Shown piece after piece: positions 4,020 through 59,271 of a stretch of DNA of 64,000 nt. The translations under genes and the position numbers were made by a program. The DNA comes from Macrostomum lignano (taxonomy: Eukaryota), in the NCBI GenBank assembly GCA_002269645.1, contig NIVC01000212.1, forward strand, positions 372,001 through 436,000, written 5' to 3'. The notes beneath the pieces were generated by a model, which saw only the letters and a list, made by a program, of their open reading frames with translations, did not search any database and had not been told where the DNA came from. The stretch's first letter is position 1. The number at the start of each line of letters is the position of its first letter.

Positions 4020-4545
4020 TAATAAGATTCCCCTCTCTAAAGAATCCCCCTTTGATAAGACTCCCTTCTCCAAAGAATTCCACTTTGATAAGATTCCCCT
4101 CTCTAAAGAATTCCCCTTTGATACGATTTCCCTCTCTAAAGAATTCCCCTTTGATACGATTTCCCTCTCTAAAGAATTCCCCTTTGATACGATTCCCCTC
4201 TCTAAAGAGTTCCCCTTTGATAAGATTCCCTTCTCTAAAGAATTCCCCTTTGATACGATTTCCCTCTCTAAAGAATTCCCCTTTGATACGATTCCCCTCT
4301 CTAAAGAGTTCCCCTTTGATAAGATTCCCTTCTCTAAAGAATTCCCCTTTGATAAGATTCCCCTCTCTAAAGAGTTCCCCTTTGATAAGATTCCCCTCTC
4401 TAAAGAGTTCCCCTTTGATAAGATTCCCCTCTCTAAAGAGTTCCCCTTTGATAAGATTTCCCTCTCTAAAGAGTTCCTTTTTGATAAGAATTCCCCTTTC
4501 TAAAGAATTCCCCTTTGGTAAGATTCCCCTCTAAAGAATTCCCCA
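4020..4545. repeat. 33-bp minisatellite (gaattcccctttgataagattcccctctctaaa)
   Basis: Tandem units; ORFs with an 11-aa period (KEFPFDKIPLS). Confidence 0.9.
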
Positions 4546-4589
4546 TTTCACTGCATGTCCTAAACAACCAGTCGCGCCTGGCAACTCTG

Positions 4590-8092: not shown

Positions 8093-9468
8093 TTGACAGC
8101 GAAGAACTTTGGACCGATTGGTGGCCATTTAGGCATCCTGGGTTCGAATTCATCAGTTAAACGGCGCAAAATCAAATGAAATAGCAGCATCTCTAGCCTA
8201 CGCGTTTACACTGCTGATCAGCCTCTAAAATTTTAATAACCATGCAACACCAACTATTTGCTATCCGACTTCTTAATAGACTGACTTTATCAGTTGGAAC
8301 ACAAAATGTTCATATCATTTTCGGTGCCTCTTGTTTAAAATTGTTGTGCTACGAGAGTATCCTTCTTTTCCATTCCATTCCATTATTATTCGAGCTACTT
8401 GTCTGTTTCACATTAAAATGCACTCAAGCTACGATGTGTATTCTCCTAGTACGCTCGTATGTGTACATGTACATTCCCTATCAGTAGTTTTTTCAGAATT
8501 TATATTATGTTATTAATCCATGCTTAATTAATAAATAATCATAAGCTGTCGTTTTACAAGTAAAATCATCAGTCGATTGGGGATTTATTAAATGCAAATG
8601 CAAAAGTGCTACAAGAATACTTGTGGTCAGTACTATGGAACATATTGATTGCAACAAATCGTTGTTGCCAAAATTTATTACTGACAGTGCTATCACTGTC
8701 AGGCATCACAAATGCGTAGAAACGTAATGTTAAATAACAATACCAAGAATAAAGTTATTCACCCTTTACTCCATTTGGATAGCTTGCTTTAACGAGCCTG
8801 CACCGTACATGTACTGTGTATATTGTATATCTAATTGTAATTATACGAAGGTGTTACCGACGAGGTCGTAGAATTGGTTTAAAAAGCCTGTTGCAAGATG
8901 GAAGTGATTCCATGCTTCTTATAGACATTTTATGGTTGAAGAGAATTATTATATCAATTCAAGATTGTTCAGATGAAATTTTAACAGATTCCATTACCGA
9001 AAAGCAGATTTGTATTAAACTATTTTTATTAGACAAAGTCATACAAATAAAAAATATTTTGTTTTGCACATCAGAATTCATAATTTTAAGCCCAATTCAG
9101 CACAGAAGCAATGAAAATACATTATTTCTAGGTTTTAGGCGCTATTTTGAAATTTCGTATTAGGGGGCCTTTTCATAATAACCTTTTGTTTCCATAACTA
9201 GAGGGAGATGCGCGCTATAAAGTTTTTATTATTAAATGACAATCGCCAAGAAGAAAGTGAAAAATTGTGCTAAGTGAGTTTGTTAAGGCAGTCAAACATT
9301 CAACAGAATTAAATAGTTATACTGCTGTTTTTCTTGGAAGATCAGAACCGATTCTGATTCTGGAATTGGTAATATGAAAAGCCTCAGGGTGTGCAAAATT
9401 TACCTGTAAACAGTGTTGGGCACCAGTCCGTTAATAAGCGTTAATCCGTTAATAAGCGTTAATAAGCG

Positions 9469-12400
9469 TTAACCTACAGATATGACGGTTCACACTAAAT
9501 TCCTAGGCTCCTTCTTTTCTAGTGGAACGATAGTCTATGGCCAAACCTCACTAAAAAACTAAGCCTGAGAACTCAAAACGAGGCCTGTTAACCGGTTAAC
9601 AGGCCTAATAACAAGGCCTGAGAACATTTTAAAATGACTATAATTTGTCAGTTAGTCCATTAGAAGTATAAACTATCAACAGCAGTAAAGACCGATTCAT
9701 TCTTGCCGATTTACTCGAACATGATTTCTACGCTGTTGGTGTCACCGTGGACAGTCATGCGCACCTTCTTGGTAGTACCCTCAGACACGACATCTTGCTC
9801 ATTGGTCCGCCCATTAGACTCCACGGCTCCTCCGGCGTGTAGAGCGTAGGTCATACGCGAATGATCCTGGACGTCTAGCCGTATGTACCTCTCTATTGCG
9901 TTGGACGAATGTCCAGTGACACTACTATGGACTGGCGTAAGGCGCGATTTTGGAGGTGGGGTGGGTGTCAACCCTCCTCGCCTCTCATTGGCTGGCGCCC
10001 CGATCACTAGGTGATCGATACCCGTATCGATATCGGCGACTCGAACCCGCGACCCTCCCCAGCCGCAGGCGCACCTACCGATATTAGATCCCAATAAATC
10101 AATCAGATCCCAAATCAATCAGATCCCAAATCAATCAGATCCCAAGCGCACCCTCCCGAGCCGCAGGCGCCCATGCAGCAGGCGCCCATGCCGCAGGCAC
10201 CCCGAGTGTACACTCTCCCGATATGTGTGTACACCGATATGTAGTCATCGATACGGGCCTCTTCCCCTCTCTCACCTACATCTCAACTAGCGAAATCGAA
10301 CCCAGGTCGCGCCCATACTAGGACACTACACGGTTGTGGGGTATAGGGAGCGAGAAGTTTCAACCCTAACGCTGACGCAGCCCTGTACAGTGAGAGTGTA
10401 CGGGCAGAGAGGGGTGGGGCGGACAGAGAACCAGCCACTAGGTTGTTATACTGTTGAAGCATAGGGAGCGAGAAGTTTTAACCCCGATGCTGACGCAGCC
10501 CTGTACACTGAGCGTGTACGGGCAGAGGGTGGGTGGAAAGAGATGTGAATAACACAGCCTGCTGCAGGAGCCGGATAGAGAGGCGCATGCTAGGACAGAG
10601 AGGTAGTGTGAGTCACACACACCCCACAGAGAAAGCCATACAGAGGATAGAGAGCTCCCTCCCCAGTTGCAGGGGACAGAGAGGCAGGCAGGGTATGCAG
10701 GGGCATGCGAACCGTCAAGGGGCCACGCGAGGATAGAGTGGAGGAGCAGAGATGTGTTTGGACAGAGAGCCAGCCACGTGTGCGTAGTGTGAGGGAACAG
10801 AAACATATGGAGCAGGAGGGAGATAGGAAGCAAACGCGCAGGGTAAGGGAGCCATGCAGCAGGGAGCAGTGTACAGTGAGACACGGGCAGGGGTGGAGCC
10901 GTGCGTGGACAGAGCTGAACGCACGGTCAGCTGCAGGAATAGGATGATAGAGAGGCGCGGAGGGGGACAGAGAGCAGTGTGCAGGGTAGGCAGCCACGCA
11001 GGCTGGGGAACAGAGAGGCGCGTGTCAGCCAGTTACAGCCCGGGACAGAGAAGTATGAAGGGGGGCCTGGGACAGAGAAGTATGAAGGGGGGCCTGGGAC
11101 AGAGTTGCGAGCAAGGCACAGAGAGAGGTAGGGTCCGGTAGCTATGTATAGGCAGGGACCCACGCGAGGGCAGGACAGGGCATGCAAGGCATGCAAATTA
11201 CATGCAAGGGCAGTGAGGTGTGCGCGGAGGGAGACAGAGAGCAGTGTGTAGGGGTAGGTAACAGCAAACTTTAGTAGAGGCGCGTGCGGGGACGGAGAAA
11301 CCAGTCTGAGCGTACAGAGACGTTACAGAGAGGTACACAAACAGAGACCAAAGCGGGCAGAGCACGTGTAGGGACAGAGACGTGAGGGAGAATAGACCAA
11401 AACACGCTATGTATTTTCAAAAGTTGGTTTTAGTGCAGCATATTTAATAGCGGGTAGTATAATAGTATGTACATAGTAGGTATAATGGTAGTAATAATAG
11501 TAAGTATATTAGCCCAAAAGGTAGGCTAAAACAGGCTAAACTGTGTGTACGCATCCTCATCACCCCACAAGCCCCCTCTCCCGCCAGACTCACTCTACCA
11601 AACCCTCCTGTATTGCTGCATGAAGGAAAATATAGTGTAAAAATACAGATCTTAACCGTCAGACCGCTGAAATCAGGGCACACTAGAGGGGTTTCGGGGT
11701 CTGCATGCTCTATGTAAGCTGCTTGAGGAGGTTCCAAGGGCGTTGTGAGGGTTTCCATTATGTTTTGAAAAAAACTAGAGGCTTAAATACAACGTTTTAT
11801 TCAAAAGTAGGTTATTTTAATGAAATAGCTGACACAATCATTGTCGAGAGTAGAAATTTTTATAAGAAACCAGGCATTTTAGCAAAAATAAACCTTCAAA
11901 CCACATAAAATTGAATAAAAAGCAGACATTTTCAATTATAAACCGCAAGTATTTTAATAGAAAAGTAAGCAAACAAGGCACAAAACCAGCAAATTTTACC
12001 TTTTTATTTTAATGTTACTGATAAGGTAGAGAGTAGAAACTTGTGAGCTGTACGGAGTTAGAAAGTATTAACCATTATGTATCGTATGAATTATTAGTTC
12101 AGTACCAGCCATTGGTCAAGCGAGCATTTATGAAGTTATTACGAGTGATGAAGGGATAGAGAGCTATATACAGGAAGACAGTATCCTTCTAAACCACCAC
12201 GAACAGATTGCTAATAGAGATAAGCTTTGTCTGTGTGCAGTATGAGTAAGCGAAGGCGGGGCAAATACTTTTCCACATGCCGGACAGAACAGTATTGTGC
12301 TAGGATTTCTCTCGAAATCGCGGTACGTTACTAGTTTTTATCACACCATCCAGATGCGTCAACTAGTCAGCAGTAGTCATTTATATGTTATTAGAACTTA

Positions 12401-15400
12401 CAAACCCAGGTCAAGTAAATATTACAAAGAGTATATTACGTACACACGCCAACTCCGAATACCAAGCCATACTAGTCTACTTGCAGTGCTCCTGGAGGGA
12501 AGGGACGGCGGGGTGTACATCCGGCAGGGTGGGCGTCCAGCGAGTGTACATCTGACAGGATGGGTGTTCAGCAAGTGTACATCTGACAGGGTGGGCGTTC
12601 AGCAAGTGTACCTTCAGCGTCGAGTAGGTGTACACCCGTCAGTGGGAACTCAGCCCCTCCCACCAATGTCGTGTGCATGCGGTTAGTCAGTATAGTGGTG
12701 GGGTAGACGGTGCAGGAAGGAAACCCAGATGCTGACGCTGCCCTGTACAGCGAGCAACCAGCCCTCCTGTAGCAGGAGGGGGACAGAGAGTGCGTGGAGG
12801 CAGTAGGAGATAGAGGACGCTACCCGGCATGTCGCAGCACGCGGCGCGGGACAGAGAGGCAGTGTGTAAGTCACCCCCACAGGGAGAGCTGCCCTGGCAG
12901 GAGGCGCGGGACAGAGAGGCGGTGAATCACACCCCACGGAGAGAGCCGTACAGCGAGCTTCCCCACCCGAGTCCGGTAAATATTACAGAGTATTACGTGC
13001 ACACGCCAGCCCTGAATACCAAGCCATACTAGTCTACCTGCAGTGCTCCCAGAGGGAAGGGATGGTCAGGAGTTACACACCAAGAATGCATTCATACAAA
13101 GAGTACACAACTCGAGCCCAGACACCAAGTCACAGTCTACTTACAGTAGAGATGGTAGATTAATAGCAAGATTATATTACAATTAGACCTCCCTAGCACA
13201 TGAGGAGTGAAATTCAATAATAATTGAATTCAATAATAATACAACATTTAGACGTAGTAATTTAATTACAAAATACCACTAACACTGAGCCAACGAATTG
13301 TAGGTTACAAAGGAGTTGCCACTCATATGGAAAGCCAGTATAATGCAGGTGTATATTATTAAAACATAGACAAAAACGATGCAGACGTATATACACACTA
13401 TTGATTTTGTACATGTACATTTCGGCATATTACCACACATCGCAGGCACATATTATATATCGGGGATAGGTTAAAATACACACATCGTAGATGTAGAAGC
13501 AGACACAATGCAGGAAAATTATGATACGAGTGTACATATTAGTGCGTAAAAGTATCATATTATGACACCCTGTAGCACATATTGACATAATGCAGGGGAA
13601 AATATTGACAGAAATAGTACACAATTGTAGAGGTAACAACCCGCCAACTAGTAAGGACATCCAGCACTTGTTCAGGTTTTTATTATTTCGAGACGAGTGT
13701 CATGCCCCCGCAAGAGATCTTATCAGAAATTTGTTGAACTCCACTGCAACTCTCCCCAGAGCCTCCAAATGTGAGTTTTTAACCAGGGTCGAGTACAAAG
13801 GACCCGCCCACTCTTAACCCCAAGGGTGATCGTAGCGGAGACCAAGTACAGTGCGGACGGAGAGGGGTAACAGAAAGCGCTGCATCAGACCGCAGGGCTG
13901 CATTCCTCCCCGAGGTAGGCGCGTCAGCTCCCACTCCTCATTTAACCATCAAGTAAACTAAAGAAGTCAAGCAGAAAGCCTTACAATCACCCGCAACCAG
14001 CACAAGTAAGAGTACTTTCCACTAGAGAGCCATAGTGCAAGATTCGCGAGCCAAGTTGAAGAAGCACACCAAATTACACTAAAGACATATGTATTAAAAA
14101 GCATACCGGCACCTCTACAAAAACACAGTATGTACCGATTAAAGTTGCTTTTGGTGCAGTGTATTTAATAAAAGCAGGTACCTAACACAAAAGTAGGCAT
14201 CAATGCAGTGCACGGGCTAAACTGTATTTACAAACGCAGGGCAACGAACTACACACAATGTAGCGCATAGACATAATTGTACGCATAAATGTACGCAATT
14301 TCCGGTATATAGGACCAAATGTACACAATGTACACAAACACACACACACACACACTCAGGCGCATCCTGCAGCGCATCCTGCAGCACCGATCGCCGCAGG
14401 CGATGGCGCCATCGGCAGGAAGCTCTTGCTGTGAATACGCCTGAGTGTGTGTGTGTGTGTGTTTGTGTACATTGTGTACATTTGGTCCTATATACCGGAA
14501 ATTGCGTACATTTATGCGTACAATTATGTCTATGCGCTACATTGTGTGTAGTTCGTTGCCCTGCGTTTGTAAATACAGTTTAGCCCGTGCACTGCATTGA
14601 TGCCTACTTTTGTGTTAGGTACCTGCTTTTATTAAATACACTGCACCAAAAGCAACTTTAATCGGTACATACTGTGTTTTTGTAGAGGTGCCGGTATGCT
14701 TTTTAATACATATGTCTTTAGTGTAATTTGGTGTGCTTCTTCAACTTGGCTCGCGAATCTTGCACTATGGCTCTCTAGTGGAAAGTACTCTTACTTGTGC
14801 TGGTTGCGGGTGATTGTAAGGCTTTCTGCTTGACTTCTTTAGTTTACTTGATGGTTAAATGAGGAGTGGGAGCTGACGCGCCTACCTCGGGGGAGGAATG
14901 CAGCCCTGCGGTCTGATGCAGCGCTTTCTGTTACCCCTCTCCGTCCGCACTGTACTTGGTCTCCGCTACGATCACCCCTTGGGGTTAAGAGTGGGCGGGT
15001 CCTTTGTACTCGACCCTGGGTTAAAAACTCACATTTGGAGGCTCTGGGGAGAGTTGCAGTGGAGTTCAACAAATTTCTGATAAGATCTCTTGCGGGGGCA
15101 TGACACTCGTCTCGAAATAATAAAAACCTGAACAAGTGCTGGATGTCCTTACTAGTTGGCGGGTTGTTACCTCTACAATTGTGTACTATTTCTGTCAATA
15201 TTTTCCCCTGCATTATGTCAATATGTGCTACAGGGTGTCATAATATGATACTTTTACGCACTAATATGTACACTCGTATCATAATTTTCCTGCATTGTGT
15301 CTGCTTCTACATCTACGATGTGTGTATTTTAACCTATCCCCCGATATATAATATGTGCCTGCGATGTGTGGTAATATGCCGAAATGTACATGTACAAAAT

Positions 15401-18400
15401 CAATAGTGTGTATATACGTCTGCATCGTTTTTGTCTATGTTTTAATAATATACACCTGCATTATACTGGCTTTCCATATGAGTGGCAACTCCTTTGTAAC
15501 CTACAATTCGTTGGCTCAGTGTTAGTGGTATTTTGTAATTAAATTACTACGTCTAAATGTTGTATTATTATTGAATTCAATTATTATTGAATTTCACTCC
15601 TCATGTGCTAGGGAGGTCTAATTGTAATATAATCTTGCTATTAATCTACCATCTCTACTGTAAGTAGACTGTGACTTGGTGTCTGGGCTCGAGTTGTGTA
15701 CTCTTTGTATGAATGCATTCTTGGTGTGTAACTCCTGACCATCCCTTCCCTCTGGGAGCACTGCAGGTAGACTAGTATGGCTTGGTATTCAGGGCTGGCG
15801 TGTGCACGTAATACTCTGTAATATTTACCGGACTCGGGTGGGGAAGCTCGCTGTACGGCTCTCTCCGTGGGGTGTGATTCACCGCCTCTCTGTCCCGCGC
15901 CTCCTGCCAGGGCAGCTCTCCCTGTGGGGGTGACTTACACACTGCCTCTCTGTCCCGCGCCGCGTGCTGCGACATGCCGGGTAGCGTCCTCTATCTCCTA
16001 CTGCCTCCACGCACTCTCTGTCCCCCTCCTGCTACAGGAGGGCTGGTTGCTCGCTGTACAGGGCAGCGTCAGCATCTGGGTTTCCTTCCTGCACCGTCTA
16101 CCCCACCACTATACTGACTAACCGCATGCACACGACATTGGTGGGAGGGGCTGAGTTCCCACTGACGGGTGTACACCTACTCGACGCTGAAGGTACACTT
16201 GCTGAACGCCCACCCTGTCAGATGTACACTTGCTGAACACCCATCCTGTCAGATGTACACTCGCTGGACGCCCACCCTGCCGGATGTACACCCCGCCGTC
16301 CCTTCCCTCCAGGAGCACTGCAAGTAGACTAGTATGGCTTGGTATTCGGAGTTGGCGTGTGTACGTAATATACTCTTTGTAATATTTACTTGACCTGGGT
16401 TTGTAAGTTCTAATAACATATAAATGACTACTGCTGACTAGTTGACGCATCTGGATGGTGTGATAAAAACTAGTAACGTACCGCGATTTCGAGAGAAATC
16501 CTAGCACAATACTGTTCTGTCCGGCATGTGGAAAAGTATTTGCCCCGCCTTCGCTTACTCATACTGCACACAGACAAAGCTTATCTCTATTAGCAATCTG
16601 TTCGTGGTGGTTTAGAAGGATACTGTCTTCCTGTATATAGCTCTCTATCCCTTCATCACTCGTAATAACTTCATAAATGCTCGCTTGACCAATGGCTGGT
16701 ACTGAACTAATAATTCATACGATACATAATGGTTAATACTTTCTAACTCCGTACAGCTCACAAGTTTCTACTCTCTACCTTATCAGTAACATTAAAATAA
16801 AAAGGTAAAATTTGCTGGTTTTGTGCCTTGTTTGCTTACTTTTCTATTAAAATACTTGCGGTTTATAATTGAAAATGTCTGCTTTTTATTCAATTTTATG
16901 TGGTTTGAAGGTTTATTTTTGCTAAAATGCCTGGTTTCTTATAAAAATTTCTACTCTCGACAATGATTGTGTCAGCTATTTCATTAAAATAACCTACTTT
17001 TGAATAAAACGTTGTATTTAAGCCTCTAGTTTTTTTTTTCAAAACATAATGGAAACCCTCACAACGCCCTTGGAACCTCCTCAAGCAGCTTACATAGAGC
17101 ATGCAGACCCCGAAACCCCTCTAGTGTGCCCTGATTTCAGCGGTCTGACGGTTAAGATCTGTATTTTTACACTATATTTTCCTTCATGCAGCAATACAGG
17201 AGGGTTTGGTAGAGTGAGTCTGGCGGGAGAGGGGGCTTGTGGGGTGATGAGGATGCGTACACACAGTTTAGCCTGTTTTAGCCTACCTTTTGGGCTAATA
17301 TACTTACTATTATTACTACCATTATACCTACTATGTACATACTATTATACTACCCGCTATTAAATATGCTGCACTAAAACCAACTTTTGAAAATACATAG
17401 CGTGTTTTGGTCTATTCTCCCTCACGTCTCTGTCCCTACACGTGCTCTGCCCGCTTTGGTCTCTGTTTGTGTACCTCTCTGTAACGTCTCTGTACGCTCA
17501 GACTGGTTTCTCCGTCCCCGCACGCGCCTCTACTAAAGTTTGCTGTTACCTACCCCTACACACTGCTCTCTGTCTCCCTCCGCGCACACCTCACTGCCCT
17601 TGCATGTAATTTGCATGCCTTGCATGCCCTGTCCTGCCCTCGCGTGGGTCCCTGCCTATACATAGCTACCGGACCCTACCTCTCTCTGTGCCTTGCTCGC
17701 AACTCTGTCCCAGGCCCCCCTTCATACTTCTCTGTCCCAGGCCCCCCTTCATACTTCTCTGTCCCGGGCTGTAACTGGCTGACACGCGCCTCTCTGTTCC
17801 CCAGCCTGCGTGGCTGCCTACCCTGCACACTGCTCTCTGTCCCCCTCCGCGCCTCTCTATCATCCTATTCCTGCAGCTGACCGTGCCGTTCAGCTCTGTC
17901 CACGCACGGCTCCACCCCTGCCCGTGTCTCACTGTACACTGCTCCCTGCTGCATGGCTCCCTTACCCTGCGCGTTTGCTTCCTATCTCCCTCCTGCTCCA
18001 TATGTTTCTGTTCCCTCACACTACGCACACGTGGCTGGCTCTCTGTCCAAACACATCTCTGCTCCTCCACTCTATCCTCGCGTGGCCCCTTGACGGTTCG
18101 CATGCCCCTGCATACCCTGCCTGCCTCTCTGTCCCCTGCAACTGGGGAGGGAGCTCTCTATCCTCTGTATGGCTTTCTCTGTGGGGTGTGTGTGACTCAC
18201 ACTACCTCTCTGTCCTAGCATGCGCCTCTCTATCCGGCTCCTGCAGCAGGCTGTGTTATTCACATCTCTTTCCACCCACCCTCTGCCCGTACACGCTCAG
18301 TGTACAGGGCTGCGTCAGCATCGGGGTTAAAACTTCTCGCTCCCTATGCTTCAACAGTATAACAACCTAGTGGCTGGTTCTCTGTCCGCCCCACCCCTCT

Positions 18401-19475
18401 CTGCCCGTACACTCTCACTGTACAGGGCTGCGTCAGCGTTAGGGTTGAAACTTCTCGCTCCCTATACCCCACAACCGTGTAGTGTCCTAGTATGGGCGCG
18501 ACCTGGGTTCGATTTCGCTAGTTGAGATGTAGGTGAGAGAGGGGAAGAGGCCCGTATCGATGACTACATATCGGTGTACACACATATCGGGAGAGTGTAC
18601 ACTCGGGGTGCCTGCGGCATGGGCGCCTGCTGCATGGGCGCCTGCGGCTCGGGAGGGTGCGCTTGGGATCTGATTGATTTGGGATCTGATTGATTTGGGA
18701 TCTGATTGATTTATTGGGATCTAATATCGGTAGGTGCGCCTGCGGCTGGGGAGGGTCGCGGGTTCGAGTCGCCGATATCGATACGGGTATCGATCACCTA
18801 GTGATCGGGGCGCCAGCCAATGAGAGGCGAGGAGGGTTGACACCCACCCCACCTCCAAAATCGCGCCTTACGCCAGTCCATAGTAGTAGTGACGCGGGCT
18901 ATATCGTCCCTAGCCAGTCCAGCCCGATGCAACGTGCTGGCACAAGTCTTCCTTAGAGACTGGTTTGAGAATTTACCATCCGTAGACACGGGTTTGGTGA
19001 TATTCGCCACATTAATTGGAGTCGAGAGTATGCCGGCCGATAGGTAGACACAGATAGACCGCAGTCGTCTCCATGAAGCAGTAGTTTGGTTTGCCTCTCC
19101 TGAAACCAGTCCTCAAATTGCTTTAGTGCCCATCGTTCCTTCCGGCGTGTCGATTCCGGCACAGCAGCGTCAATCCTTTCAGCAACCTCGTTATCGGACA
19201 GTAAAGCAAATCTAGAAGCCTCGTTTTCTCTCAGTTCAATGTCATTCAACCAGTCGAAAGCGAGTTCCAAGTCGTGTTCCATGATTCTCAGTTCTCTCTG
19301 ATTTCCTCTAGCTGCCCAAACCTTTCCTTTCTCGCTTTTAGCTCGTATTTTAAGCATCGAATCTTTTACTTTAATTTTTGTCTATGGTTAAATGTGGGGG
19401 CTGCGCCCCCCACACCCCCGCTTTTGACGAATACCTCTCTCCCACTCCCAGTCGCTTCCAATATCTGTAGATTAA
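9469..19475 (-). mobile_element. Crypton (tyrosine recombinase transposon), internally deleted ~1-kb derivative, split by a 9-kb insertion
   Basis: Bounded by TTAA with a near-inverted 15-mer (ttaacctacagatat / atatctgtagattaa). Minus-strand pieces: RFALLSDNEV...AVPESTRRKERWALKQFEDW, PIGRHTL, KFSNQSLRKTCASTLHRAGLARDDIARV (ending ~18891), continuing TGHSSNAIERYIRLD at ~9917. These are the DUF3504/Crypton-type N-terminus and the HxLR / GH..Y catalytic boxes. Confidence 0.8.
9921..18887. mobile_element. 8,967-bp foldback (palindromic) non-autonomous element with 6-bp TSD; Polinton/Maverick-like ends (tentative)
   Basis: Left arm 9921-14362 is the reverse complement of 14438-18887, with a 75-bp spacer. 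Termini ACTACTATGG...CCATAGTAGT. Direct repeat AGTGAC at 9915-9920 and 18888-18893; removing the element restores Crypton codons ARVTGH. The family assignment is inferred. Confidence 0.85.
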
Positions 19476-19624
19476 GTACGATCTTCGTCTGTTCTTTTGG
19501 TGTCTATGGCAGAAAGACCTCGGTCGCAATTCTAAGGCCTCGGCTTCGCCTCGGCCTGAGAACAGCGTCCTCGGCCTTTCTCTGCCATAGGAACCAAAAG
19601 AACAGACAAAGATTATATACTTAA
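19472..19624. mobile_element. ~150-bp TTAA-bounded hairpin element (Crypton-associated or TTAA MITE)
   Basis: ttaagtacgatcttcgtctgttcttttggtgtctatggcagaaag is imperfectly inverted by ctttctctgccataggaaccaaaagaacagacaaagattatatacttaa; it shares a TTAA with the Crypton end. Confidence 0.6.
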
Positions 19625-19927
19625 GATTTTTCATTAACGTTAACGGACTGTCGTTAAGATTTTTTGAACTAACGGATTAACGAATTTGCGTTAAAAATTT
19701 TGTGAATTAACGATAAATTCATCGTTAACGGTAGTGTCTATGTCAATGACCAAAGACGCAAAGAAGGAACGAAAAATAGAAGTCTTACAAGAAGTTTAAA
19801 CATTACGAACGTATTTGAGCTGGCCTATATGCCTAAATATAATCTCTTTATTTATGACGATGATCATACAGACGTACATGTAATTAACAACTTCTTACAA
19901 ATAAACTTTAAAATAATGAATTAAAAT

Positions 19928-20812
19928 CAGTGTTGGGCACCGTTAATGAAAATCTTAACTTCCGTTAATAGCAAAAGCGTTAGCGTTAAAACAAAAAAAT
20001 CTTTACTTTTTAACTCCTAATTTCGTTAAGTTAACTGAAAGTTAACTGATAATCGTTAATAAGCGTTAATCCGTTAAAGTTAACACAGAAAATGCGGAAA
20101 TCTTGCACGTTTTTTTCCAAAACAGACTTCGTATTGCACGTCTAGTTGCTATTCCATCTTTTAAGCGAAACACAGAGGTCATCTAAGCGATTTGAAAGCT
20201 AAAAAAGTAATAAATAATCATTTTAAAAACTTGCATGCATAATACTACTAAAAGTAAAGCATATGGTAAAAAAAGAAACTTATTTTATTTGAAACTTAAA
20301 AGCTAATAGCGAGAAATTCATAATTAAATACGCATAGGAAGGTTGTTTCAGTACCATTAGCAGGCGCAGCAGAAAGTTGCGAAAGATTGGGACAGAAGTG
20401 AATCAAAGCGATCGATGCTCACGCGCAAGAAATAAAGTTTCACACTATTTTAATTCATTATTTTAAAGTTTATTTGTAAGAAGTTGTTAATTACATGTAC
20501 ATCTGTATGATCATCGTCATAAATAAAGAGATTATATTTAGGCATATAGGCCAGCTCAAATACGTTCGTAATGTTTAAACTTCTTGTAAGACTTCTATTT
20601 TTCGTTCCTTCTTTGCGTCTTTGGTCATTGACATAGACACTACCGTTAACGATGAATTTATCGTTAATTCACAAAAGTTTTAACGCAAATTCGTTAATCC
20701 GTTAGTTCAAAAAAATCTTAACGACAGTCCGTTAACGTTAATGAAAAATCTTAACGCTTATTAACGCTTATTAACGGATTAACGCTTATTAACGGACTGG
20801 TGCCCAACACTG
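19928..20812 (-). mobile_element. hAT-type MITE copy B (885 bp), inserted inverted into copy A
   Basis: TIRs CAGTGTTGGGCACC / GGTGCCCAACACTG; 8-bp TSD ATTAAAAT at 19920-19927 and 20813-20820; interior is the reverse complement of copies A and C. Confidence 0.95.
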
Positions 20813-21515
20813 ATTAAAATAGTGTGAAACTTTATTTCTTGCGCGTGAGCATCGATCGCTTTGATTCACTTCTGTCCCAATCTTTCGCAACCTTCTGCTG
20901 CGCCTGCTAATGGTACTGAAACAACCTTCTTATGCGTATTTATAAATTATGAATTTCTCGCTAATAGCTTTTAAGTTTCAAATAAAATAAGTTACTTTTA
21001 TACCATAGGCTTTAATTTTAGTAGTATTATGCATGCAAGTTTGCACGCGAAGGTGTATTCAGCACGCCAGTGAAGTATGAGACAGACCAGGCCTAAGGGC
21101 TACGGTCTGCGATGCTTCACGCCTGCCCCTATATTCAGCAGGTCAAGGCTGGAGAGGGAGGTCTGCACCCGCTATTTGCCACTGGCAGCCGCAGACCCCC
21201 CCCCCTCACGCTGTTTCACAAGTCGACCCAGGGTACTCGTCCCCGCGTGTGTTCAAGGCAGACCCTAGGGCTGCTGGACAGACTGGGCTCCGACGCTGGC
21301 GACCCATCCAGTGGCTTCGGCCGAATTTGGGTATGCGGGTCTGGCTTGCCAGCCTGCAGGCCGTGGTACTGCTTAACGTACCCCCTAATGCCTAAGGTGT
21401 TTGACCGTGCCGATGGGCTGGAAGGCCGGGGGGTTGTCCGGTCGCTAGCGGTCCTTTTCTTTTTCTTCTTTCCTCTTTCTTTTGTGACTCAGCTCACTCC
21501 TTCCCGCTTTCAGCT

Positions 21516-22981
21516 ATGGCGTCATCCGCCTCTTTAACCCCCGCTGAAGCCGGGGCCCCGGCAACTCCGGCCGGTGACTCTGGCACCAGCGCCGCCCCAC
21601 CGGGGGCAGATGGGCTTGCCGCCGGCTCGGCTGGTGACATGCCCGCACGCGCAACCGGGCCCTCCGCTGAAGCCCGACGCACCCGCAACCAACGCCGCAA
21701 CGAGCGGCGACGGCGACTACGGGGTACTGCGGGCCGGCCACCGGCGGAAGGGGAACCTAGGGAGGGCGGGCTGCTGTTGGGCCGAAAGGAACCACAGCAA
21801 CCCCTGCCCCCCAGGATACAACCCCCGCTGGTGTGCCACCCAGTATACCTGCTACAAGCGCGGCCGGGCCTTCGGGAACCGCCGCCACCAACTACGCCTC
21901 AAAGGTCAAGCTCCAACCGGCGGTCATCGTCTTCGGGGAAGAGCAGGACCTCACGGCCGACGAGCTCGACAGTGCCTGGCGCACCATCGATGCTGCGCTC
22001 ATCGACCAGCTCCTGGCGGGCCGCCCTGTGAGCGTGGTCAAGTCTGCCAAGACCGACGGCTGCATCTTCATCTGGTGCAGCTCGGAGGAGAGCAGCCGCA
22101 ATCTACGCGAGCTTCTGCCAAAGCTGAACTGGCCCAAGAAGCTCGGCAAGCTCGTCTTCGCCAGCGAGGGCGAACGACAGAAGACCCAGCGCTTTCGCGT
22201 CTGGATCCCGGCCGGCAGTGCCATTAAGTCCGGAGATCAGCTTAGGCAAATATTGCTAAAGCTGCACCCCGACCTTAAGGTCAACGGGCTCCTACACCAC
22301 GCCACTTCCCGCAAGGAGAAGGGGGCTACGGTGATCCTAGGGCTCTCTGATGACTGGGCTAAGCGCTTGCCGCCTAAGTCCACAATTCATATTGGTCTGA
22401 CTCAGCTGACCATCCTCCGTTGCGAGGAGCGGAAAGCTGATGAAGCCAAGAATGCCAAAGCTTCCGAAACCGGAACTGGGGCCCAGGCTCCTCCGGCAAA
22501 GAAGCCGAGGCAAACGGCCGATCCTATGCCCGGTAAGGCAGTTCGCGCTGCTGAAACCGGAAATCGCAATCGCAGACCCGCCAGGAGCACCCGGAGGTCC
22601 GGCCTGATCCAGCGCGCGCTGGACCAGGCCAAGAACCTTCGTGCGCATCGTGAGCGGGCCCGCGCTTCTCGCGCTCCACCCCAACAGCCAGAAGGCCAGA
22701 CTCTAAGCGGGGAGGCTCCGACCGACTGGTTCGAGTCTGTGACTCACCAGGAGGCTGGCGCCACCCGCATCGACCTGACCGACGAGGCAGAGGGGACGGG
22801 CAGTGACAGCACCGAAGCACGCAGGAGAGGCGACGGTAACGTCCACGCTGGGCTCACGTCCGCGGAGGACTCCACAGCCACCCTAACTGCTGAGGACGCT
22901 GAAACTCCCATGGAGGTCTGCGGGTCACCCACCACTGAAAAGGAGGAGGATGACCTGCTCAACGATTCCCCAACTGCGTGA
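21516..22981 (+). CDS. LINE ORF1 protein (DUF4780-like region); a 1-nt frameshift near 21750-21830 joins ORF 21516 to ORF 21833
   Basis: ATG at 21516. Basic low-complexity N-terminus, then WRTIDAAL...GCIFIWC..EES...RFRVWIP, resembling DUF4780 in LOA-type ORF1s. The downstream frame has a TAG at 21758, so a shift is required. Confidence 0.65.
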
Positions 22982-22983
22982 TA

Positions 22984-25900
22984 ATGATCAGCAACCAGGG
23001 AATCCATTGCCTGCAGATTAATCTGCAGCACTGCGTCGCAGCCTCGGTCAACCTTATGCGTTACGCCGAGCTCGACAAGCCGGGGCTCATCCTCGTCCAG
23101 GAACCCTGGACTCTCAGAGGTAAGCCTCAAAACGCCCCTGCTGGCTACAATTGTTTTTATACTTACCCTCGCGAGGCCAACCAGCCTCCCAGAGCTTGCA
23201 TCTTTGCGAGCAAAACGCTCAGTGCGTGGCTCAGATCGGACCTGTCCAACAGGGACATCTGCGTCATCCAATCCGAGGACCTTCTTCCTGGGAAGACCAC
23301 CCTCATTGCCTCGGTTTACCTACCAGGCGATGCTGCGGTCGTCCCCAGAGCCCTCGCTACGCTGGTAGAGCTCTGCTCTGCCAAAAACTACGAGCTCATG
23401 GTTGCCGGCGACATCAACGCCCACCACACTCACTGGGGCAGCACTGGCATTAATCAGAGAGGCGAAGACCTCCTAGCCTACGTTGCCTCTACGACCCTCG
23501 AGTTCTGCAACTCTGGGTCCACCCCTACCTTTGACAACGGACGGTGGTCGGAGGTGATCGACGCTACGCTCGCAACGCCCAGACTCTACCAGAGTATTGG
23601 GGCGTGGCGGGTGCTTCCAGTGTCCTCACTATCGGATCACAAGTTCATCTCCTTCAACCTAATGGCCGCGCGTAGCGCAACTCGTGTTACGTGGAGACGG
23701 AACGCCAGAAATACGGATTGGGAAACCTTCGGGCTCGCCCTGAAGGAATTCCATCGGTCTCCTGGCCAACCATCCACGATCACGTCGTGCCGAGAGGCGG
23801 ATGAGTGCGCGACTGTTTTGACAGAGACGCTAACCGCCGCCTTTGAGGCGTCATGCCCTTTAAAAGCCTATAAAGGGAAAAAATCGGCGCCGTGGTGGAA
23901 TCCCGAGCTCGGCAACCTCCGTCGCAGGGCTAAGAGACTCCACCGCAGAGCAACTAAAACTAAGAGCCCTGCAGACCAAACCGCCTATCATGAAGCAATT
24001 CATGAGTTTAAAAGGCAGGTTAGGAATGCAAAGGCTCAAAAATGGCGACAATACTGTGAGGAGCTAGAGGGCTCACACCCCACCTCCAGAGTTGTGAAAG
24101 CGCTCACGCTGGACAAAATGTCTAAGCTCTCCTCGGTCAAACGCACCGACGGTACGTCCACGGACAACCCAGGGGAAACGCTTGATGTAATGCTCACTGC
24201 GTTTTTCCCTAACGAGCCAGCTAACCAGACCACTCCGGATCACTCGGAGGGAGGTCACGCGCTGGCTGCATCTATCATCACGGAGGACCGCATTGTGAGA
24301 GCGGCAAATTCCTTCAAGCCTTTCAAAGCCCCAGGACCCGACGGCATTGTACCGGCCCTTCTAAGAGAGGCGGTTAAATGCCCAGGCTTCCTGCGCAAAC
24401 TTTGCAGCCTTCTTCGGGCATGCATCACGCTTGGTTATGTCCCGCAGGCATGGACCGAGGCAAAGGTGATCTTTATCCCTAAGCCAGGCCGCCCGGACTA
24501 CCATTCTATCAAATCCTTCAGACCGATCAGCTTGACCTCCTCCCTGGTCAAGCTGATGGAGAGACTGGTGCTTTGGCGCCTTCTCTCTGTTGAGCTGAAG
24601 AACAAACCTCTCAGCGAGAACCAGCACGCTTTTCGGGCGGGTCGCTCCACTGAAAGCGCGCTGCACGTCCTGGTCGATAAACTCGAGAAGGCCGTGCTTG
24701 GTAGTGGCTTTGCTCTGGGGATCTTCCTGGACATCATTGGCGCCTTCGATAACGTCCTCTTTGAGGCGTTCCGAAGAGCTCTTTGTGAGAGGCTAACGCA
24801 CTCACATCTCACCAGATGGATCATGTACATGATCAGCCATCGCACGGCCACCGCCAGTCTGCTGGGCTACCAGAGGACGGTCCCCGTCTGCAAAGGTAGC
24901 CCGCAAGGTGGGGTGCTGTCTCCAGTTCTCTGGAATATGGTCATCGATGAGCTCCTCCGGGATGTTCGGCCTGACCCCATTCTGAAAGTTGGATATGCGG
25001 ACGATGTCACCGCGGTGGCATCTGGTCCGTCCCCTGATACCCTCAGGGACCTTCTTCAGAACTTCATCTACGCTGCTGAGCAATGGGCGGACCGCTGTGG
25101 TTTAAGGCTCTCTGAGACTAAGACCGCAGCGATCATGTTCACCAGCAGGACCAAGTGGCAGATTCGGCCGCTCACGCTTTACGGAAGGGAAATCCCCTTC
25201 TGCAAGCAGACTAAATGTCTGGGTATTACCCTGGACCACAGGCTGAACTGGTCTCCCCACGTTCAAACAAAAGCCAAAAAGGCCTTCGCAGTCCTCGCGC
25301 AATTGCGCAGGGCCGTCGGCACCACCTGGGGGCTCACCCCCAAGCGCCTCTGGTGGATCTACACTGCAATGGTTAGGCCCGCTATCTCGTATGGCGGCCT
25401 GATCTGGGCTAGCGCCCTGCAGATAAAGACCTGTCTAGAGGCTCTCAGGAGAGCGCAAGGGCGCGCTTGTCGCACGATCATGAGCGCCCCTCCGTCTGCT
25501 CCTTACGATGGCCTCAACGCCTTCCTCAACATTCCTCCGCTGGACATCTTTGTCCGCAGGGAAGCGGCTAAGACTGCCCGCCGTCTAGCTGACGCTGGCA
25601 TTCGAATCCAGCCCCATAGGGCCATGGCTAAGCGCAAGCTTCTGCCCCACGCTGACCTCTGCCTCAAGGACTTGAGAGACAGCGGCGGGCTCCACGTCCT
25701 ATCTGACGGCGAACCCCGCACTCTCAACCTCTTTCAGCGCTACAAGGTCACCATCCCCTCTAGGGATGCTGCCAATGACCACTGGAATTTCCAGGAGGTC
25801 CATTGCTACACGGACGGATCCATCAAAGACGGTCGCGCCGGCTTTGGGGTCTGCATCATCATCAACGGCCGCGTAATTGCCACGCATGCCCAGCACACTG

Positions 25901-26688
25901 GTAGACTCTCTACAGTCTTCCAGAACGAAGTCCTTGCCATCAGCTCTTGCGCTGCAGAGCTAAACGCCAAGGTTACGAGAGGAAAGACTATTGTCATCCA
26001 CTCCGACAGCCAAGCGGCCTTACAGGCCCTTTGCCACACCACAACGAACTCCCGGACAGTCGCCGACTGCGCCCGGCAGCTCAACCTCCTGGCCAGAAGC
26101 AATACTGTCAGGCTGAAGTGGATCCCAGGGCACGCAGGGTTTCCGGGGAACGAGCTGGCAGACACCCTCGCCAAGAGGGGCGGCTCTGGCTCTTTTTTCG
26201 GCCCTGCCCCCCTGGTCCCTATGCCCTTGACAGTCATCAATCGTCAGATCGACGACTGGGCTGACTCCCTCCACAGGGACAGATGGGCGGGCACCCAAAA
26301 CTGCCGGCAATCTCGTGCCGCGGTTCCTTGCCCGTCTCACAGGCTCAGAAACATCCTTCTGAACCAGAATCGGAAGGATATTCGAGCCCTTGTCATGACC
26401 CTTACCGGCCATGGCTACCTCGCCAGGCACTGCTTCCTCCGAGGCGACCTCGAGAGCGAAATTTGCCCCTTTTGCGAGTGCGACAATGAAGATGCTCAGC
26501 ACTTTGTCTGTCACTGCCCTTTCTTTAACAGAGACCGGCTACGCTACCTCGGGCCGAACCCGTCCATTGACGAGGTTTGCCAGCCCGACAGCATCCCACG
26601 GCTCATCCAGTTCCTTCGGGCGACTAGACGAGCCAGTTTCTTCCCAACGGAAGATCACGCTGCAGGACGGACCGGCGGACCACCCTGA
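22984..26688 (+). CDS. LINE ORF2: APE endonuclease, reverse transcriptase, RNase H, C-terminal CCHC finger (1234 aa, uninterrupted)
   Basis: LQINLQH, LVQEPW, GDINAHH, SDH (APE); FRPISL, LDIIGAFD, GSPQGGVLSP, YADD (RT); YTDGS, HSDSQAAL, WIPGH..GNELAD (RNase H); CPFC..ED..HFVCHC. Confidence 0.96.
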   Translation: MISNQGIHCLQINLQHCVAASVNLMRYAELDKPGLILVQEPWTLRGKPQNAPAGYNCFYTYPREANQPPRACIFASKTLSAWLRSDLSNRDICVIQSEDLLPGKTTLIASVYLPGDAAVVPRALATLVELCSAKNYELMVAGDINAHHTHWGSTGINQRGEDLLAYVASTTLEFCNSGSTPTFDNGRWSEVIDATLATPRLYQSIGAWRVLPVSSLSDHKFISFNLMAARSATRVTWRRNARNTDWETFGLALKEFHRSPGQPSTITSCREADECATVLTETLTAAFEASCPLKAYKGKKSAPWWNPELGNLRRRAKRLHRRATKTKSPADQTAYHEAIHEFKRQVRNAKAQKWRQYCEELEGSHPTSRVVKALTLDKMSKLSSVKRTDGTSTDNPGETLDVMLTAFFPNEPANQTTPDHSEGGHALAASIITEDRIVRAANSFKPFKAPGPDGIVPALLREAVKCPGFLRKLCSLLRACITLGYVPQAWTEAKVIFIPKPGRPDYHSIKSFRPISLTSSLVKLMERLVLWRLLSVELKNKPLSENQHAFRAGRSTESALHVLVDKLEKAVLGSGFALGIFLDIIGAFDNVLFEAFRRALCERLTHSHLTRWIMYMISHRTATASLLGYQRTVPVCKGSPQGGVLSPVLWNMVIDELLRDVRPDPILKVGYADDVTAVASGPSPDTLRDLLQNFIYAAEQWADRCGLRLSETKTAAIMFTSRTKWQIRPLTLYGREIPFCKQTKCLGITLDHRLNWSPHVQTKAKKAFAVLAQLRRAVGTTWGLTPKRLWWIYTAMVRPAISYGGLIWASALQIKTCLEALRRAQGRACRTIMSAPPSAPYDGLNAFLNIPPLDIFVRREAAKTARRLADAGIRIQPHRAMAKRKLLPHADLCLKDLRDSGGLHVLSDGEPRTLNLFQRYKVTIPSRDAANDHWNFQEVHCYTDGSIKDGRAGFGVCIIINGRVIATHAQHTGRLSTVFQNEVLAISSCAAELNAKVTRGKTIVIHSDSQAALQALCHTTTNSRTVADCARQLNLLARSNTVRLKWIPGHAGFPGNELADTLAKRGGSGSFFGPAPLVPMPLTVINRQIDDWADSLHRDRWAGTQNCRQSRAAVPCPSHRLRNILLNQNRKDIRALVMTLTGHGYLARHCFLRGDLESEICPFCECDNEDAQHFVCHCPFFNRDRLRYLGPNPSIDEVCQPDSIPRLIQFLRATRRASFFPTEDHAAGRTGGPP

Positions 26689-27314
26689 CCGGCCCCACGC
26701 CTCTGCCTGTCTGCGGGCCTTCAGGGGCTAGCGGAATGGGCGACCCTCGCCTCCCCGCTGTGTCTACGGACCACCCTGCAGCTAAGTCAAAGTCAAGTCA
26801 GCATGCAAGTTTTTAAAATGATTATTTATTACTTTTTTAGCTTTCAAATCGCTTAGATGACCTCTGTGTTTCGCTAAAAAGATGGAATAGCAAAGACGTG
26901 CAATACGAAGTCTGTTTTGGAAAAAAACGTGCAAGATTTCCGTATTTTCTGTGTTAACTTTAACGGATTAACGCTTATTAACGATTATCAGTTAATTTTC
27001 AGTTAACTTAACGAAATTAGGAGTTTAAAAGTAAAGATTTTTTTGTTTTAACGCTAACGCTTTTGCTATTAACGGAAGTTAAGTTTTTCATTAACGGTTC
27101 CCAACACTGCCTGTAAATAATCCTAATTCTTCGGTGGTTGTACTTCGTAGTTAATTGCAAAATGCATGTCATCGTCAGGCGGTTTAGGCCATCGATGATA
27201 ACCCTCACATATAGTTTTTGTTCTGATAGACTACTTGTACTTGTAGACGCTCCAAGAAATGGAAATTCATGGCCTAGGTGGCTAGCCCTAGCGAGCGCTA
27301 GGGTAGGCCTAGGC

Positions 27315-38261: not shown

Positions 38262-38499
38262 CCAATAAGCAAAGAACAAAAATTATTCATGAAAAATCAA
38301 CAAAAAAGCACATTTTCTTAAAAACCAATTCCTTTTTTAGTTTTAAAAATCACCTTATTCAAGTAAAATTGTCACAGACAAATGTTTGCTATGTTTGTTA
38401 TGAATCTCTTTTTTTTCCAAAATTAATAAAGAGATAATAAAATGAAGCTTTTACAAAGATAACAGACATTCCCCTAAATATAATTTAATATCCCCATGA

Positions 38500-59162: not shown

Positions 59163-59194
<32 letters not shown>

Positions 59195-59223
59195 GCAGAC
59201 AGACAGACAGACAAACAGACAGG

Positions 59224-59271
<48 letters not shown>

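What the first reader, a model, noticed from the sequence alone, without database searches (positions are those of the whole stretch)
9915..18893. A 9-kb near-perfect palindrome that inserted as one unit with a 6-bp TSD: candidate snap-back Polinton-type element
Seen: arms of 4,442 and 4,450 bp with a 75-bp spacer. The only arm differences I spotted are homopolymer lengths (e.g. near 10919, 11770, 13463, 13785, 13910). Ends are ACTACT...AGTAGT, with AGTGAC duplicated on both sides. Excising the element restores the Crypton codons ARV-TGH, so the palindrome arrived as a unit. No transposase, integrase or polymerase is recognisable. Established: Polintons/Mavericks make 6-bp TSDs with a retroviral-type integrase and have short tandem repeats at the termini, as used in protein-primed replication; their canonical ends are usually described as 5'-AG, which differs from here. 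Inference: this may be a head-to-head (snap-back) defective genome of a linear protein-primed element, retaining two integrase-competent ends and mobilised in trans, i.e. a giant foldback family.
Basis: partly seen in the sequence, partly recalled or inferred. Interest (0 to 1): 0.88.

Follow-up and report, generated by a model that had tools for sequence, protein, structure and literature searches.

The report
Nine-kilobase palindromic mobile-element insertion, flatworm
A 9-kb stretch of non-coding DNA made of two mirror-image 4.4-kb halves inserted as one piece into an older transposon of the flatworm Macrostomum lignano. Its ends and 6-bp footprint resemble those of Maverick/Polinton virus-like elements, but it carries none of their genes and no second copy could be found.

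Summary
Arms 9921-14362 and 14438-18887 are reverse complements with no substitutions. They differ only by 8 single-base homopolymer gaps. A 75-nt spacer separates them, and AGTGAC flanks both ends. The insert sits in frame in a short Crypton-like element, itself nested in a hAT MITE whose halves and 8-bp duplication match across the region, so both junctions are real. The host is Macrostomum lignano.

The arms are non-coding: six-frame Pfam and one frame against 5.8 billion proteins gave nothing.

The Polinton reading is partly supported. Published vertebrate Mavericks have perfect 6-bp duplications and 6-bp ends built of reiterated units, including an AC...GT type. Here the ends are (ACT)2...(AGT)2. 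But there are no Maverick genes, the arms are three times the published TIR maximum, and the host genome could not be searched for relatives.

A rival parse gives a 4-bp duplication (GTGA) with a CAC end. This matches a RAG1/Transib-fold transposon family shown here to be recently active in this genome. It needs a terminal mismatch and two flank coincidences.

Best reading (confidence 0.5): a young, trans-mobilised, non-autonomous element with Maverick-type ends, formed by fold-back copying of one end. Family status is untested.

The parts
9915..9920 (.). Left copy of the flanking duplication AGTGAC. Alternative parse: GTGA at 9916-9919.
   Evidence: identical 6-mer on both sides, directly next to the ends of the inverted repeat.
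9921..14362 (+). Left arm, 4,442 nt, non-coding. It starts with (ACT)2A.
   Evidence: reverse complement of the right arm, with no substitutions; no Pfam family in any of six frames at E<=0.1; the longest open stretch is under 200 codons. The one frame searched against 5.8 billion proteins was that of the right arm plus spacer.
9921..9927 (+). End motif ACTACTA: a trinucleotide repeated 2.3 times at the exact terminus. It is mirrored at 18881-18887.
   Evidence: It has the same form as the published Maverick end-motifs (PMC8097293) but different letters.
10086..10202 (+). Subterminal short tandem repeats (16-bp unit x3.1 and 15-bp unit x2.7). They are mirrored at 18606-18712. They are candidate protein-binding repeats.
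   Evidence: Tandem Repeats Finder. The binding role is inference.
14363..14437 (.). Non-palindromic 75-nt centre. It is partly self-complementary, holds a 12-bp unit x2.2, and is bordered on both sides by (CA)n/(TG)n.
   Evidence: folded with 20 nt of arm on each side, MFE -41.4 kcal/mol, z = -6.6.
14438..18887 (-). Right arm, 4,450 nt. It is the reverse complement of the left arm and is longer by 8 homopolymer bases.
18888..18893 (.). Right copy of the flanking duplication AGTGAC.
9473..19620 (-). Host of the insertion: a short (about 1.2 kb without the palindrome) Crypton-like element given as one part. It is flanked by TTAA on both sides and has no TIRs. Its tyrosine-recombinase-like reading frame is broken by one large insertion (the palindrome) and at least one frameshift, and it is much shorter than an autonomous element.
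   Evidence: Short direct repeats without TIRs are the Crypton hallmark (PMC3212892). Pfam was negative on the separate pieces, so the assignment is probable, not proven.
9399..27119 (+). Outer context: one copy of an 887-bp hAT-type MITE (ends CAGTG...CACTG, 8-bp duplication CCTGTAAA). It is split by three nested insertions: the Crypton-like element with the palindrome, a second MITE copy at 19928-20816, and a LINE at 21043-26800.
   Evidence: The MITE pieces continue in register across each insert, which ties the two sides of the palindrome together.

Best explanation
This is a real and very young insertion of a non-coding, non-autonomous mobile element in the Macrostomum lignano genome.

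Shown:
- One 8,967-bp unit, made of two identical 4.4-kb inverted arms around a 75-nt centre, entered a Crypton-like element.
- A short flanking duplication was created, most simply 6 bp.
- The unit has no gene of its own.

Inferred:
- The enzyme that inserted it makes 6-bp staggered cuts and recognises the ends (ACT)2...(AGT)2. That form of end (a reiterated unit, AC...GT, with a perfect 6-bp duplication) is the published signature of Maverick/Polinton elements. The most likely helper is therefore a Maverick-type integrase supplied in trans.
- The palindrome arose when a molecule carrying only one such end was broken or left incomplete. It folded back at a short internal self-complementary stretch, with the 75-nt centre as the loop. 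It was then copied back to the end, giving a molecule with two identical, integration-competent ends.
- Such snap-back copying is what linear, end-primed replicons are known to do. It could also happen during repair synthesis of a cut-and-paste element.
- The absence of any substitution between the arms means either very recent formation or re-homogenisation each time the molecule passes through a hairpin form.
- The arm interior is not Maverick coding sequence. At most the terminal part derives from such an element.
For: - Structure and junctions.
- Both junctions are tied together by two layers of nested hosts.
- No coding capacity.
- Published Maverick features: perfect 6-bp TSDs and reiterated end-motifs including an AC...GT type, with the reiteration linked to jumping-back in protein-primed replication (PMC8097293). 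6 bp is stated as the characteristic Polinton TSD (PMC10045372).
- The other 6-bp superfamily described there, IS3EU/GingerRoot, has TA..TA ends, which are not met here.
- A terminal trinucleotide repeat arises by chance about 1 time in 64, and a 6/6 flank identity 1 time in 4096.
- The centre is self-complementary, so it could serve as a fold-back site.
Against: - No pPolB, integrase, ATPase, capsid or protease signal in six frames at E<=0.1.
- The arms are about three times longer than the published TIR maximum of 1,500 bp, and the element is smaller than the published 13-25 kb.
- The end letters differ from every published motif.
- No paper in the library reports Mavericks in Macrostomum or other flatworms.
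- No second copy in the window, in 152 kb of other M. lignano DNA, in IMG/VR or in JGI metagenomes.
- The left end plus one flank base (CACTACT...) matches 10 of 16 positions of the end of a RAG1/Transib-fold transposon in the same window (p about 0.006). That family makes 4-bp duplications.
- Everything rests on a single copy.
Confidence: 0.5

Rival explanations
1. It is a foldback-type, non-autonomous derivative of an unidentified cut-and-paste (DDE) superfamily that makes 6-bp duplications and is unrelated to Mavericks. The long arms would arise when repair synthesis after excision switched template and copied the new strand back to the same end. The ACT repeat at the tip would be chance.
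For: - Long-armed non-coding elements with subterminal short repeats are typical of foldback derivatives (established knowledge; repeats).
- No Maverick gene in the element or elsewhere in the window.
- No Maverick reported in flatworms.
Against: - The 6-bp superfamilies described in the literature read here are Polinton and IS3EU/GingerRoot. The latter has TA..TA ends, which are not met.
- The terminal reiteration would be a 1-in-64 coincidence.
- No candidate transposase was found.
Confidence: 0.2
2. It is a non-autonomous member of the RAG1/Transib-fold transposon family that is active in M. lignano. On this reading the true ends are C-ACTACT...AGTAGT-A and the duplication is the 4-bp GTGA.
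For: - Related elements in GCA_002269645.1 all start with CAC and have perfect 4-bp duplications (ATCT, TTGC, AACC, CTCG, GTCA, CAGT, CAAT), with near-identical copies.
- Their protein models onto the RAG1 core and HzTransib.
- One member lies 13 kb away in the window, at 31525-34500.
- The palindrome's left end in that register matches its end at 10 of 16 positions. That is within the 9-14 of 16 seen between the families themselves (p about 0.006).
Against: - The right end would read TAC, not CAC. That would be the only substitution in 8.9 kb, and it would sit exactly at the terminal base.
- Two extra flank coincidences are needed to mimic a perfect 6-bp duplication (1 in 16).
- All eight observed copies of this family have perfect CAC...GTG ends.
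- No remnant of the family's protein in the arms.
- My rough likelihood estimate favours the 6-bp parse about 10 to 1 (inference).
Confidence: 0.1
3. It is a circle integrated by a tyrosine recombinase (Crypton-like). The two AGTGAC copies would be the crossover core shared by element and target, not a duplication made by staggered cuts. In the circular form the two inverted ends would flank a 6-bp core, which is the layout of a recombinase site.
For: - Cryptons are bounded by 4- or 6-bp direct repeats regarded as recombination substrates (PMC3212892).
- The host element itself shows TTAA on both sides.
- The circular junction would have the form inverted repeat, 6 bp, inverted repeat (read directly).
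Against: - Cryptons lack TIRs.
- No recombinase gene in the arms.
- The target flanks show no similarity to the element ends.
Confidence: 0.05
4. The junctions are real but the interior is mis-assembled. The true element would have shorter inverted ends and a different middle, and the perfect palindrome would be a long-read assembly product.
For: - The only arm differences are homopolymer lengths, all shorter in one arm. That looks technical rather than biological.
- Perfect multi-kb palindromes are hard to assemble and to polish.
Against: - A fold-back read artefact would also invert the flanks. Here the flanks are contiguous host sequence, tied together by the Crypton reading frame, the TTAA pair and the MITE register.
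- The centre is a unique 75-nt sequence of ordinary composition inside the contig, not at a contig end.
Confidence: 0.08

Closest known systems
Maverick/Polinton virus-like elements (as described for vertebrates in PMC8097293 and summarised in PMC10748475 and PMC10045372)
   Same: - A perfect flanking duplication, most simply 6 bp.
- Terminal inverted repeats.
- A 6-7-nt end made of a reiterated short unit.
- AC...GT termini, which have a precedent in the Monopterus albus type.
   Different: - No pPolB, integrase, capsid, ATPase or protease.
- 9 kb instead of 13-25 kb.
- Arms of 4.4 kb instead of TIRs of 100-1,500 bp.
- The arms make up 99% of the element.
- The end letters (ACT)2 are not among the published motifs.
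- No Maverick is known in the host.
Foldback-type elements of animals (Drosophila FB; Galileo of the P superfamily). From my own knowledge, not tested against sequences here.
   Same: The element consists almost wholly of two long inverted arms with a short centre, is non-coding, has short subterminal repeats, and is moved in trans.
   Different: - From memory, those make 9-bp (FB) or 7-bp (Galileo) duplications; here it is at most 6 bp.
- FB arms are built of tandem arrays. Here the arms are mostly unique sequence with only four short arrays.
- The arms here are perfectly identical.
Snap-back or hairpin-derived defective genomes of linear protein-primed replicons (adenovirus symmetric recombinants, hairpin derivatives of yeast linear killer plasmids). 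From my own knowledge.
   Same: Two copies of the same genome end face outward around a large inverted duplication with a small asymmetric centre. The interior need not be viral sequence.
   Different: Those are extrachromosomal or packaged molecules. This one is integrated in a germ-line genome with a target duplication. Replication by protein priming is not shown for it.
RAG1/Transib-fold transposons of M. lignano (window 31525-34500; L001-L008). By memory probably Chapaev-like.
   Same: Same genome and same window. The left end in the shifted register starts CAC and matches 10 of 16 positions. A 4-bp duplication is a possible parse.
   Different: The right end would start TAC. The simplest duplication is 6 bp, not 4 bp. 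There is no protein remnant, and the arms are 12-35 times longer than that family's TIRs (127-371 bp).

Membership tests
Maverick/Polinton | [quoted passage not shown] | tested here: not met
   Six-frame translation of one arm plus spacer against Pfam at E<=0.1 gave 0 families. One frame against 5.8 billion proteins gave 0 hits. The element could at most be a non-autonomous dependant, not a member in the strict sense.
Maverick/Polinton | Capsid (major and minor), packaging ATPase and protease genes | tested here: not met
   Other window ORFs were also negative.
Maverick/Polinton | Perfect 6-bp target site duplication | tested here: met
   AGTGAC on both sides. Caveat: 4-bp and 5-bp parses of the same letters exist.
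Maverick/Polinton | Conserved end-motif of a reiterated di- or trinucleotide | tested here: inconclusive
   The ends are (ACT)2A//T(AGT)2. The form matches the published motifs (AGT)2//(ACT)2, (AG)3//(CT)3 and (AC)3A//T(GT)3, but the letters match none of them.
Maverick/Polinton | TIRs of 100-1,500 bp and total size of 13-25 kb | tested here: not met
   Arms of 4,442 and 4,450 nt and a total of 8,967 nt, against the ranges quoted in PMC10748475.
Maverick/Polinton | An autonomous partner with the same ends in the same genome | not testable with these tools
   No tool searches the M. lignano genome by DNA. Only about 152 kb of GCA_002269645.1 could be fetched, and it held no match.
Foldback-type non-autonomous TIR elements | The element consists almost entirely of two long inverted arms and has no coding capacity | tested here: met
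Foldback-type non-autonomous TIR elements | A dispersed family of copies with different flanking duplications | not testable with these tools
   Only one copy is visible.
RAG1/Transib-fold CAC family of M. lignano | Both ends start CAC (CAC...GTG) | tested here: not met
   In the shifted register the left end reads CAC and the right end TAC. All 8 reference copies have CAC at both ends.
RAG1/Transib-fold CAC family of M. lignano | 4-bp target site duplication | tested here: inconclusive
   GTGA on both sides is a possible parse. The full 6/6 identity is then left to chance, 1 in 16.
IS3EU/GingerRoot | TA..TA termini with 6-bp TSD | tested here: not met
   The ends are AC...GT. The family features are from PMC10045372.
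Crypton (for the palindrome itself) | A tyrosine recombinase gene, no TIRs, and short direct repeats as crossover sites | tested here: not met
   No gene, and the element is nothing but inverted repeats. Only the 6-bp direct repeat fits.

The most novel reading that the evidence does not exclude
The element is an integrated snap-back (hairpin-derived) defective genome that depends on a Maverick/Polinton-like virus of flatworms. It would be a non-coding palindromic satellite that keeps only two copies of one replication and integration end. That would be sequence-level evidence that such elements replicate as linear, end-primed DNA and can carry foreign DNA into the germ line. It would also be the first sign of Mavericks in Platyhelminthes.
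Probability: 0.3. Interest if true: 0.8.

Novelty: new variant of a known kind. Interest (0 to 1): 0.5.

Why it matters
Perfect multi-kilobase palindromes with short centres are unstable in most genomes. One that arrived as a mobile unit shows how they can be seeded.

If the ends are truly of Maverick type, the element would be a rare non-autonomous dependant of a virus-like transposon. Its snap-back form would be indirect evidence for the linear, end-primed replication that has been inferred for Mavericks but never observed.

If instead it belongs to the RAG1/Transib-fold family found next to it, it would show that family producing giant foldback derivatives.

In either case the case is decided by one simple tabulation: the flanks of other copies in the host genome.

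Tried and rejected
- Other copies: none by BLAST of the arm against the rest of the window, by the terminal 22-mer with up to 3 mismatches, in 152 kb of other M. lignano DNA or in an ENA metagenome contig.
- Public scans: the terminal 22-mer gave 0 in IMG/VR and 0 in JGI metagenomes. The subterminal repeat gave 0 in JGI metagenomes.
Translations with X at stops were used instead. One right-arm frame against 5.8 billion proteins gave 0 hits. Six frames against Pfam gave 0 families. tblastn of all fetched proteins against the element gave only noise.
- RNA: Rfam at gathering threshold found none and no tRNA was found. At E<=1 there were only sub-threshold miRNA hits caused by the (CA)n hairpin at the centre, which I rejected as spurious.
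- Same locus in another assembly: exact look-ups of 12 different window ORFs (2 by contig look-up, 10 by cluster look-up) were all absent from the collection. Neither an independent assembly nor an empty homeologous site could be fetched.
- Pfam on the separate Crypton-like pieces was negative.
- Composite-transposon idea (two 4.4-kb elements around a centre): rejected, because the inner and outer ends of an arm share no similarity.
- Fold-back read artefact: rejected for the junctions, because the flanks are contiguous host sequence.
- CACTA/3-bp and 7-bp parses: rejected, because the letters do not allow them.
- Two homology searches timed out. The search succeeded on the C-terminal half of the protein.
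Full report
**What is in the sequence**

- The arms are 9921-14362 (4,442 nt) and 14438-18887 (4,450 nt).
- The centre is 75 nt, at 14363-14437. It is not palindromic as a whole.
- The arms show no substitution. They differ by 8 single-base gap columns at six homopolymer runs, and all 8 are shorter in the left arm.
- The element begins ACTACTATGG and ends CCATAGTAGT. The hexamer AGTGAC lies directly outside both ends.
- Complementarity stops exactly at the ends.
- The terminal 22-mer occurs nowhere else in the window, even with three mismatches.

**Where it is**

A GatB exon in the window is 100% identical to a UniRef protein of Macrostomum lignano, so the window is flatworm nuclear DNA. The surroundings form a nest of transposons, and this settles whether the junctions are real.
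- One copy of an 887-bp hAT-type MITE spans 9407-27111. It has CAGTG...CACTG ends and the 8-bp duplication CCTGTAAA at 9399-9406 and 27112-27119.
- The MITE was hit three times. A 10.1-kb insert lies at 9473-19620, bounded by TTAA on both sides. A second copy of the same MITE lies at 19928-20816, with duplication ATTAAAAT. A LINE lies at 21043-26800, with a 12-bp duplication.
- Without the palindrome, the 10.1-kb insert is a 1.2-kb element with no TIRs.
- Its minus strand reads ...NQSLRKTCASTLHRAGLARDDIARVT to the right of the palindrome and VTGHSSNAIERYI... to the left, in the same frame.
- That pattern (SLR, TGH, a tyrosine) and the 4-bp direct repeats without TIRs fit a decayed Crypton (PMC3212892). 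Pfam does not recognise the separate pieces, so I call it Crypton-like.
- Its reading frame is broken by one large insertion and at least one frameshift.

The two sides of the palindrome are therefore joined by a reading frame, by a TTAA pair and by the register of the MITE. The two junctions cannot be the product of a fold-back read, which would have inverted the flanks as well.

**What the arms contain**

The arms hold nothing that can be read as a gene.
- The longest open stretch is under 200 codons and of low complexity.
- A full one-frame translation of the right arm and spacer (X at stops) found no relative among 5.8 billion proteins.
- All six frames of the left arm plus centre gave no Pfam family, even at E<=0.1.
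- There is no tRNA and no Rfam family. The sub-threshold miRNA hits at the centre come from the (CA)n/(TG)n hairpin.
- The arms carry four short tandem arrays, two of them subterminal, and a few degenerate internal repeats.

**The ends and the duplication**

The simplest reading is a 6-bp target duplication with perfect inverted ends, AC...GT. The end is a trinucleotide repeated twice, (ACT)2A.

The literature says otherwise.
- Barreat & Katzourakis (PMC8097293) report that vertebrate Mavericks have perfect 6-bp duplications and conserved 6-bp end-motifs made of reiterated units.
- The motifs are (AGT)2//(ACT)2, (AG)3//(CT)3, and (AC)3A//T(GT)3 in the swamp eel. The authors link the reiteration to jumping-back in protein-primed replication.
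- Kojima (PMC10045372) gives 6 bp as the characteristic Polinton duplication. The other 6-bp superfamily, IS3EU/GingerRoot, always has TA..TA ends, which is not the case here.

The form of the ends and the footprint are therefore those of a Maverick, with letters not seen before.

The same bases can be cut differently: a 4-bp duplication GTGA with ends C-ACTACT...AGTAGT-A. This matters because of what lies 13 kb away.
- At 31525-34500 there is a TIR transposon with 127-bp TIRs that starts CACGCC. It carries an intact 688-codon ORF with no Pfam or PDB sequence match.
- Its relatives in M. lignano and in many metagenome contigs allowed a confident model (pLDDT 82.5).
- The only significant structural matches of that model are the RAG1 core (E 4e-11) and the HzTransib transposase.
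- Three related families fetched from GCA_002269645.1 all start with CAC. All have perfect 4-bp duplications, and their copies are 99.7-100% identical.
- In the shifted register, the palindrome's left end matches the end of the window member at 10 of 16 positions. That is as much as the more distant of these families share with each other (p about 0.006).

Three points count against this reading.
- The right end would start TAC. That would be the only substitution in 8.9 kb, sitting exactly on the terminal base.
- Two further flank coincidences (1 in 16) are needed to imitate a perfect 6-bp duplication.
- The arms hold no remnant of that family's protein.

My rough weighing favours the 6-bp reading about ten to one. 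That figure is inference, not measurement.

**How it most likely works**

- Shown: a gene-less palindromic unit was inserted with a short staggered-cut footprint, so both ends were recognised by a protein made elsewhere.
- Inferred, formation: both ends are the same sequence because the molecule was made from one end only. A molecule with a single end folded back at a short self-complementary stretch. The centre is strongly self-complementary when folded with 20 nt of arm on each side (z = -6.6). It was then copied back to the start.
- Inferred, setting: this is the classical route to snap-back defective genomes of linear end-primed replicons, and also to foldback derivatives made during repair synthesis. 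The structure alone does not tell the two apart.
- Inferred, age: zero substitutions in 4,442 aligned bases put the divergence below about 7e-4 (95% bound). The palindrome is therefore very young, or it is re-homogenised whenever it passes through a hairpin form.
- Unexplained: the eight homopolymer differences, all on one side, look like residual long-read error in a repeat that short reads cannot polish. I could not test this.

**Comparison with what is known**

The element works like a foldback element and like a snap-back defective genome. It cannot be filed as a Polinton.
- The defining genes are absent.
- The arms are three times the published TIR maximum, and the size is below the published range.
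- No Maverick is reported from Macrostomum or other flatworms in the library searched.

It meets the footprint criterion and, in form, the end-motif criterion. 'Dependant of a Maverick-type element' is therefore a hypothesis with about even odds, not a classification.

**Limits**

- None of the tools searches the M. lignano genome by DNA.
- The protein route to other copies failed because nothing in the arms is called as a gene.
- Only about 152 kb of the species' assembly could be fetched.
- Copy number, the existence of a parent and the true duplication length therefore remain open.

**Verdict**

This is a real, young, trans-mobilised palindromic element whose superfamily is undecided: Maverick-type ends are most likely, and a RAG1/Transib-fold family is the main concrete rival. 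Interest is moderate. It would be high if the Maverick link holds.

Noticed in passing
window 31525-34500 (ORF 31926-33992, minus strand); relatives at L001-L005 9417-12873, L006/L007 5110-8881, L008 4871-8211: A TIR transposon with an intact 688-codon ORF that has no Pfam or PDB sequence match. Its predicted structure (pLDDT 82.5) matches only the RAG1 core and the HzTransib transposase. Related M. lignano families all start with CAC, make perfect 4-bp duplications (not the 5 bp I recall for Transib/RAG) and have 99.7-100% identical copies, so they were recently active. By memory they are probably Chapaev-like. Homologues are common in metagenome and Logan contigs of 2-3 kb.
   Followed up: yes
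window 9399-27119; also 37377-38263: A transposon nest. An 887-bp hAT-type MITE (CAGTGTTGGGCACC... ends, 8-bp duplications CCTGTAAA and CCAATAAG) was hit by three later insertions, one of them a second copy of the same MITE with duplication ATTAAAAT.
   Followed up: yes
window 21043-26800: A non-LTR retrotransposon with two open reading frames. ORF2 is 1,236 codons and has endonuclease, reverse transcriptase and RNase H domains. It has a 12-bp target duplication GCATGCAAGTTT and a short AAGTC-type tail, and looks recently inserted.
   Followed up: partly
window 9473-9914 and 18894-19620: A 1.2-kb Crypton-like element bounded by TTAA, with no TIRs. Tyrosine-recombinase-like motifs are visible by eye but Pfam does not recognise the separate pieces.
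   Followed up: partly
window 10920, 11767, 13461, 13782, 13823, 13907 and their mirror positions: All eight arm-to-arm differences are homopolymer lengths, and all are shorter in the left arm. With random errors in either arm, a fully one-sided split has a probability of about 0.8%. The cause may be one-sided polishing, but it is unexplained.
   Followed up: no
window 953-1771, 2435-3247, 4466-5976, 6584-7324, 46955-49003, 49578-51373, 59025-60824, 61054 to about 62000, 62727-63314: Very many minisatellite arrays, for example about 96 copies of a 21-bp unit at 46955-49003. They produce long spurious ORFs on both strands.
   Followed up: no
window 55104-55862: Next to GatB exons, an ORF carries about six tandem copies of a unit of roughly 27 codons ([27 protein letters not shown]). 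This may be a minisatellite inside or beside the GatB gene.
   Followed up: no
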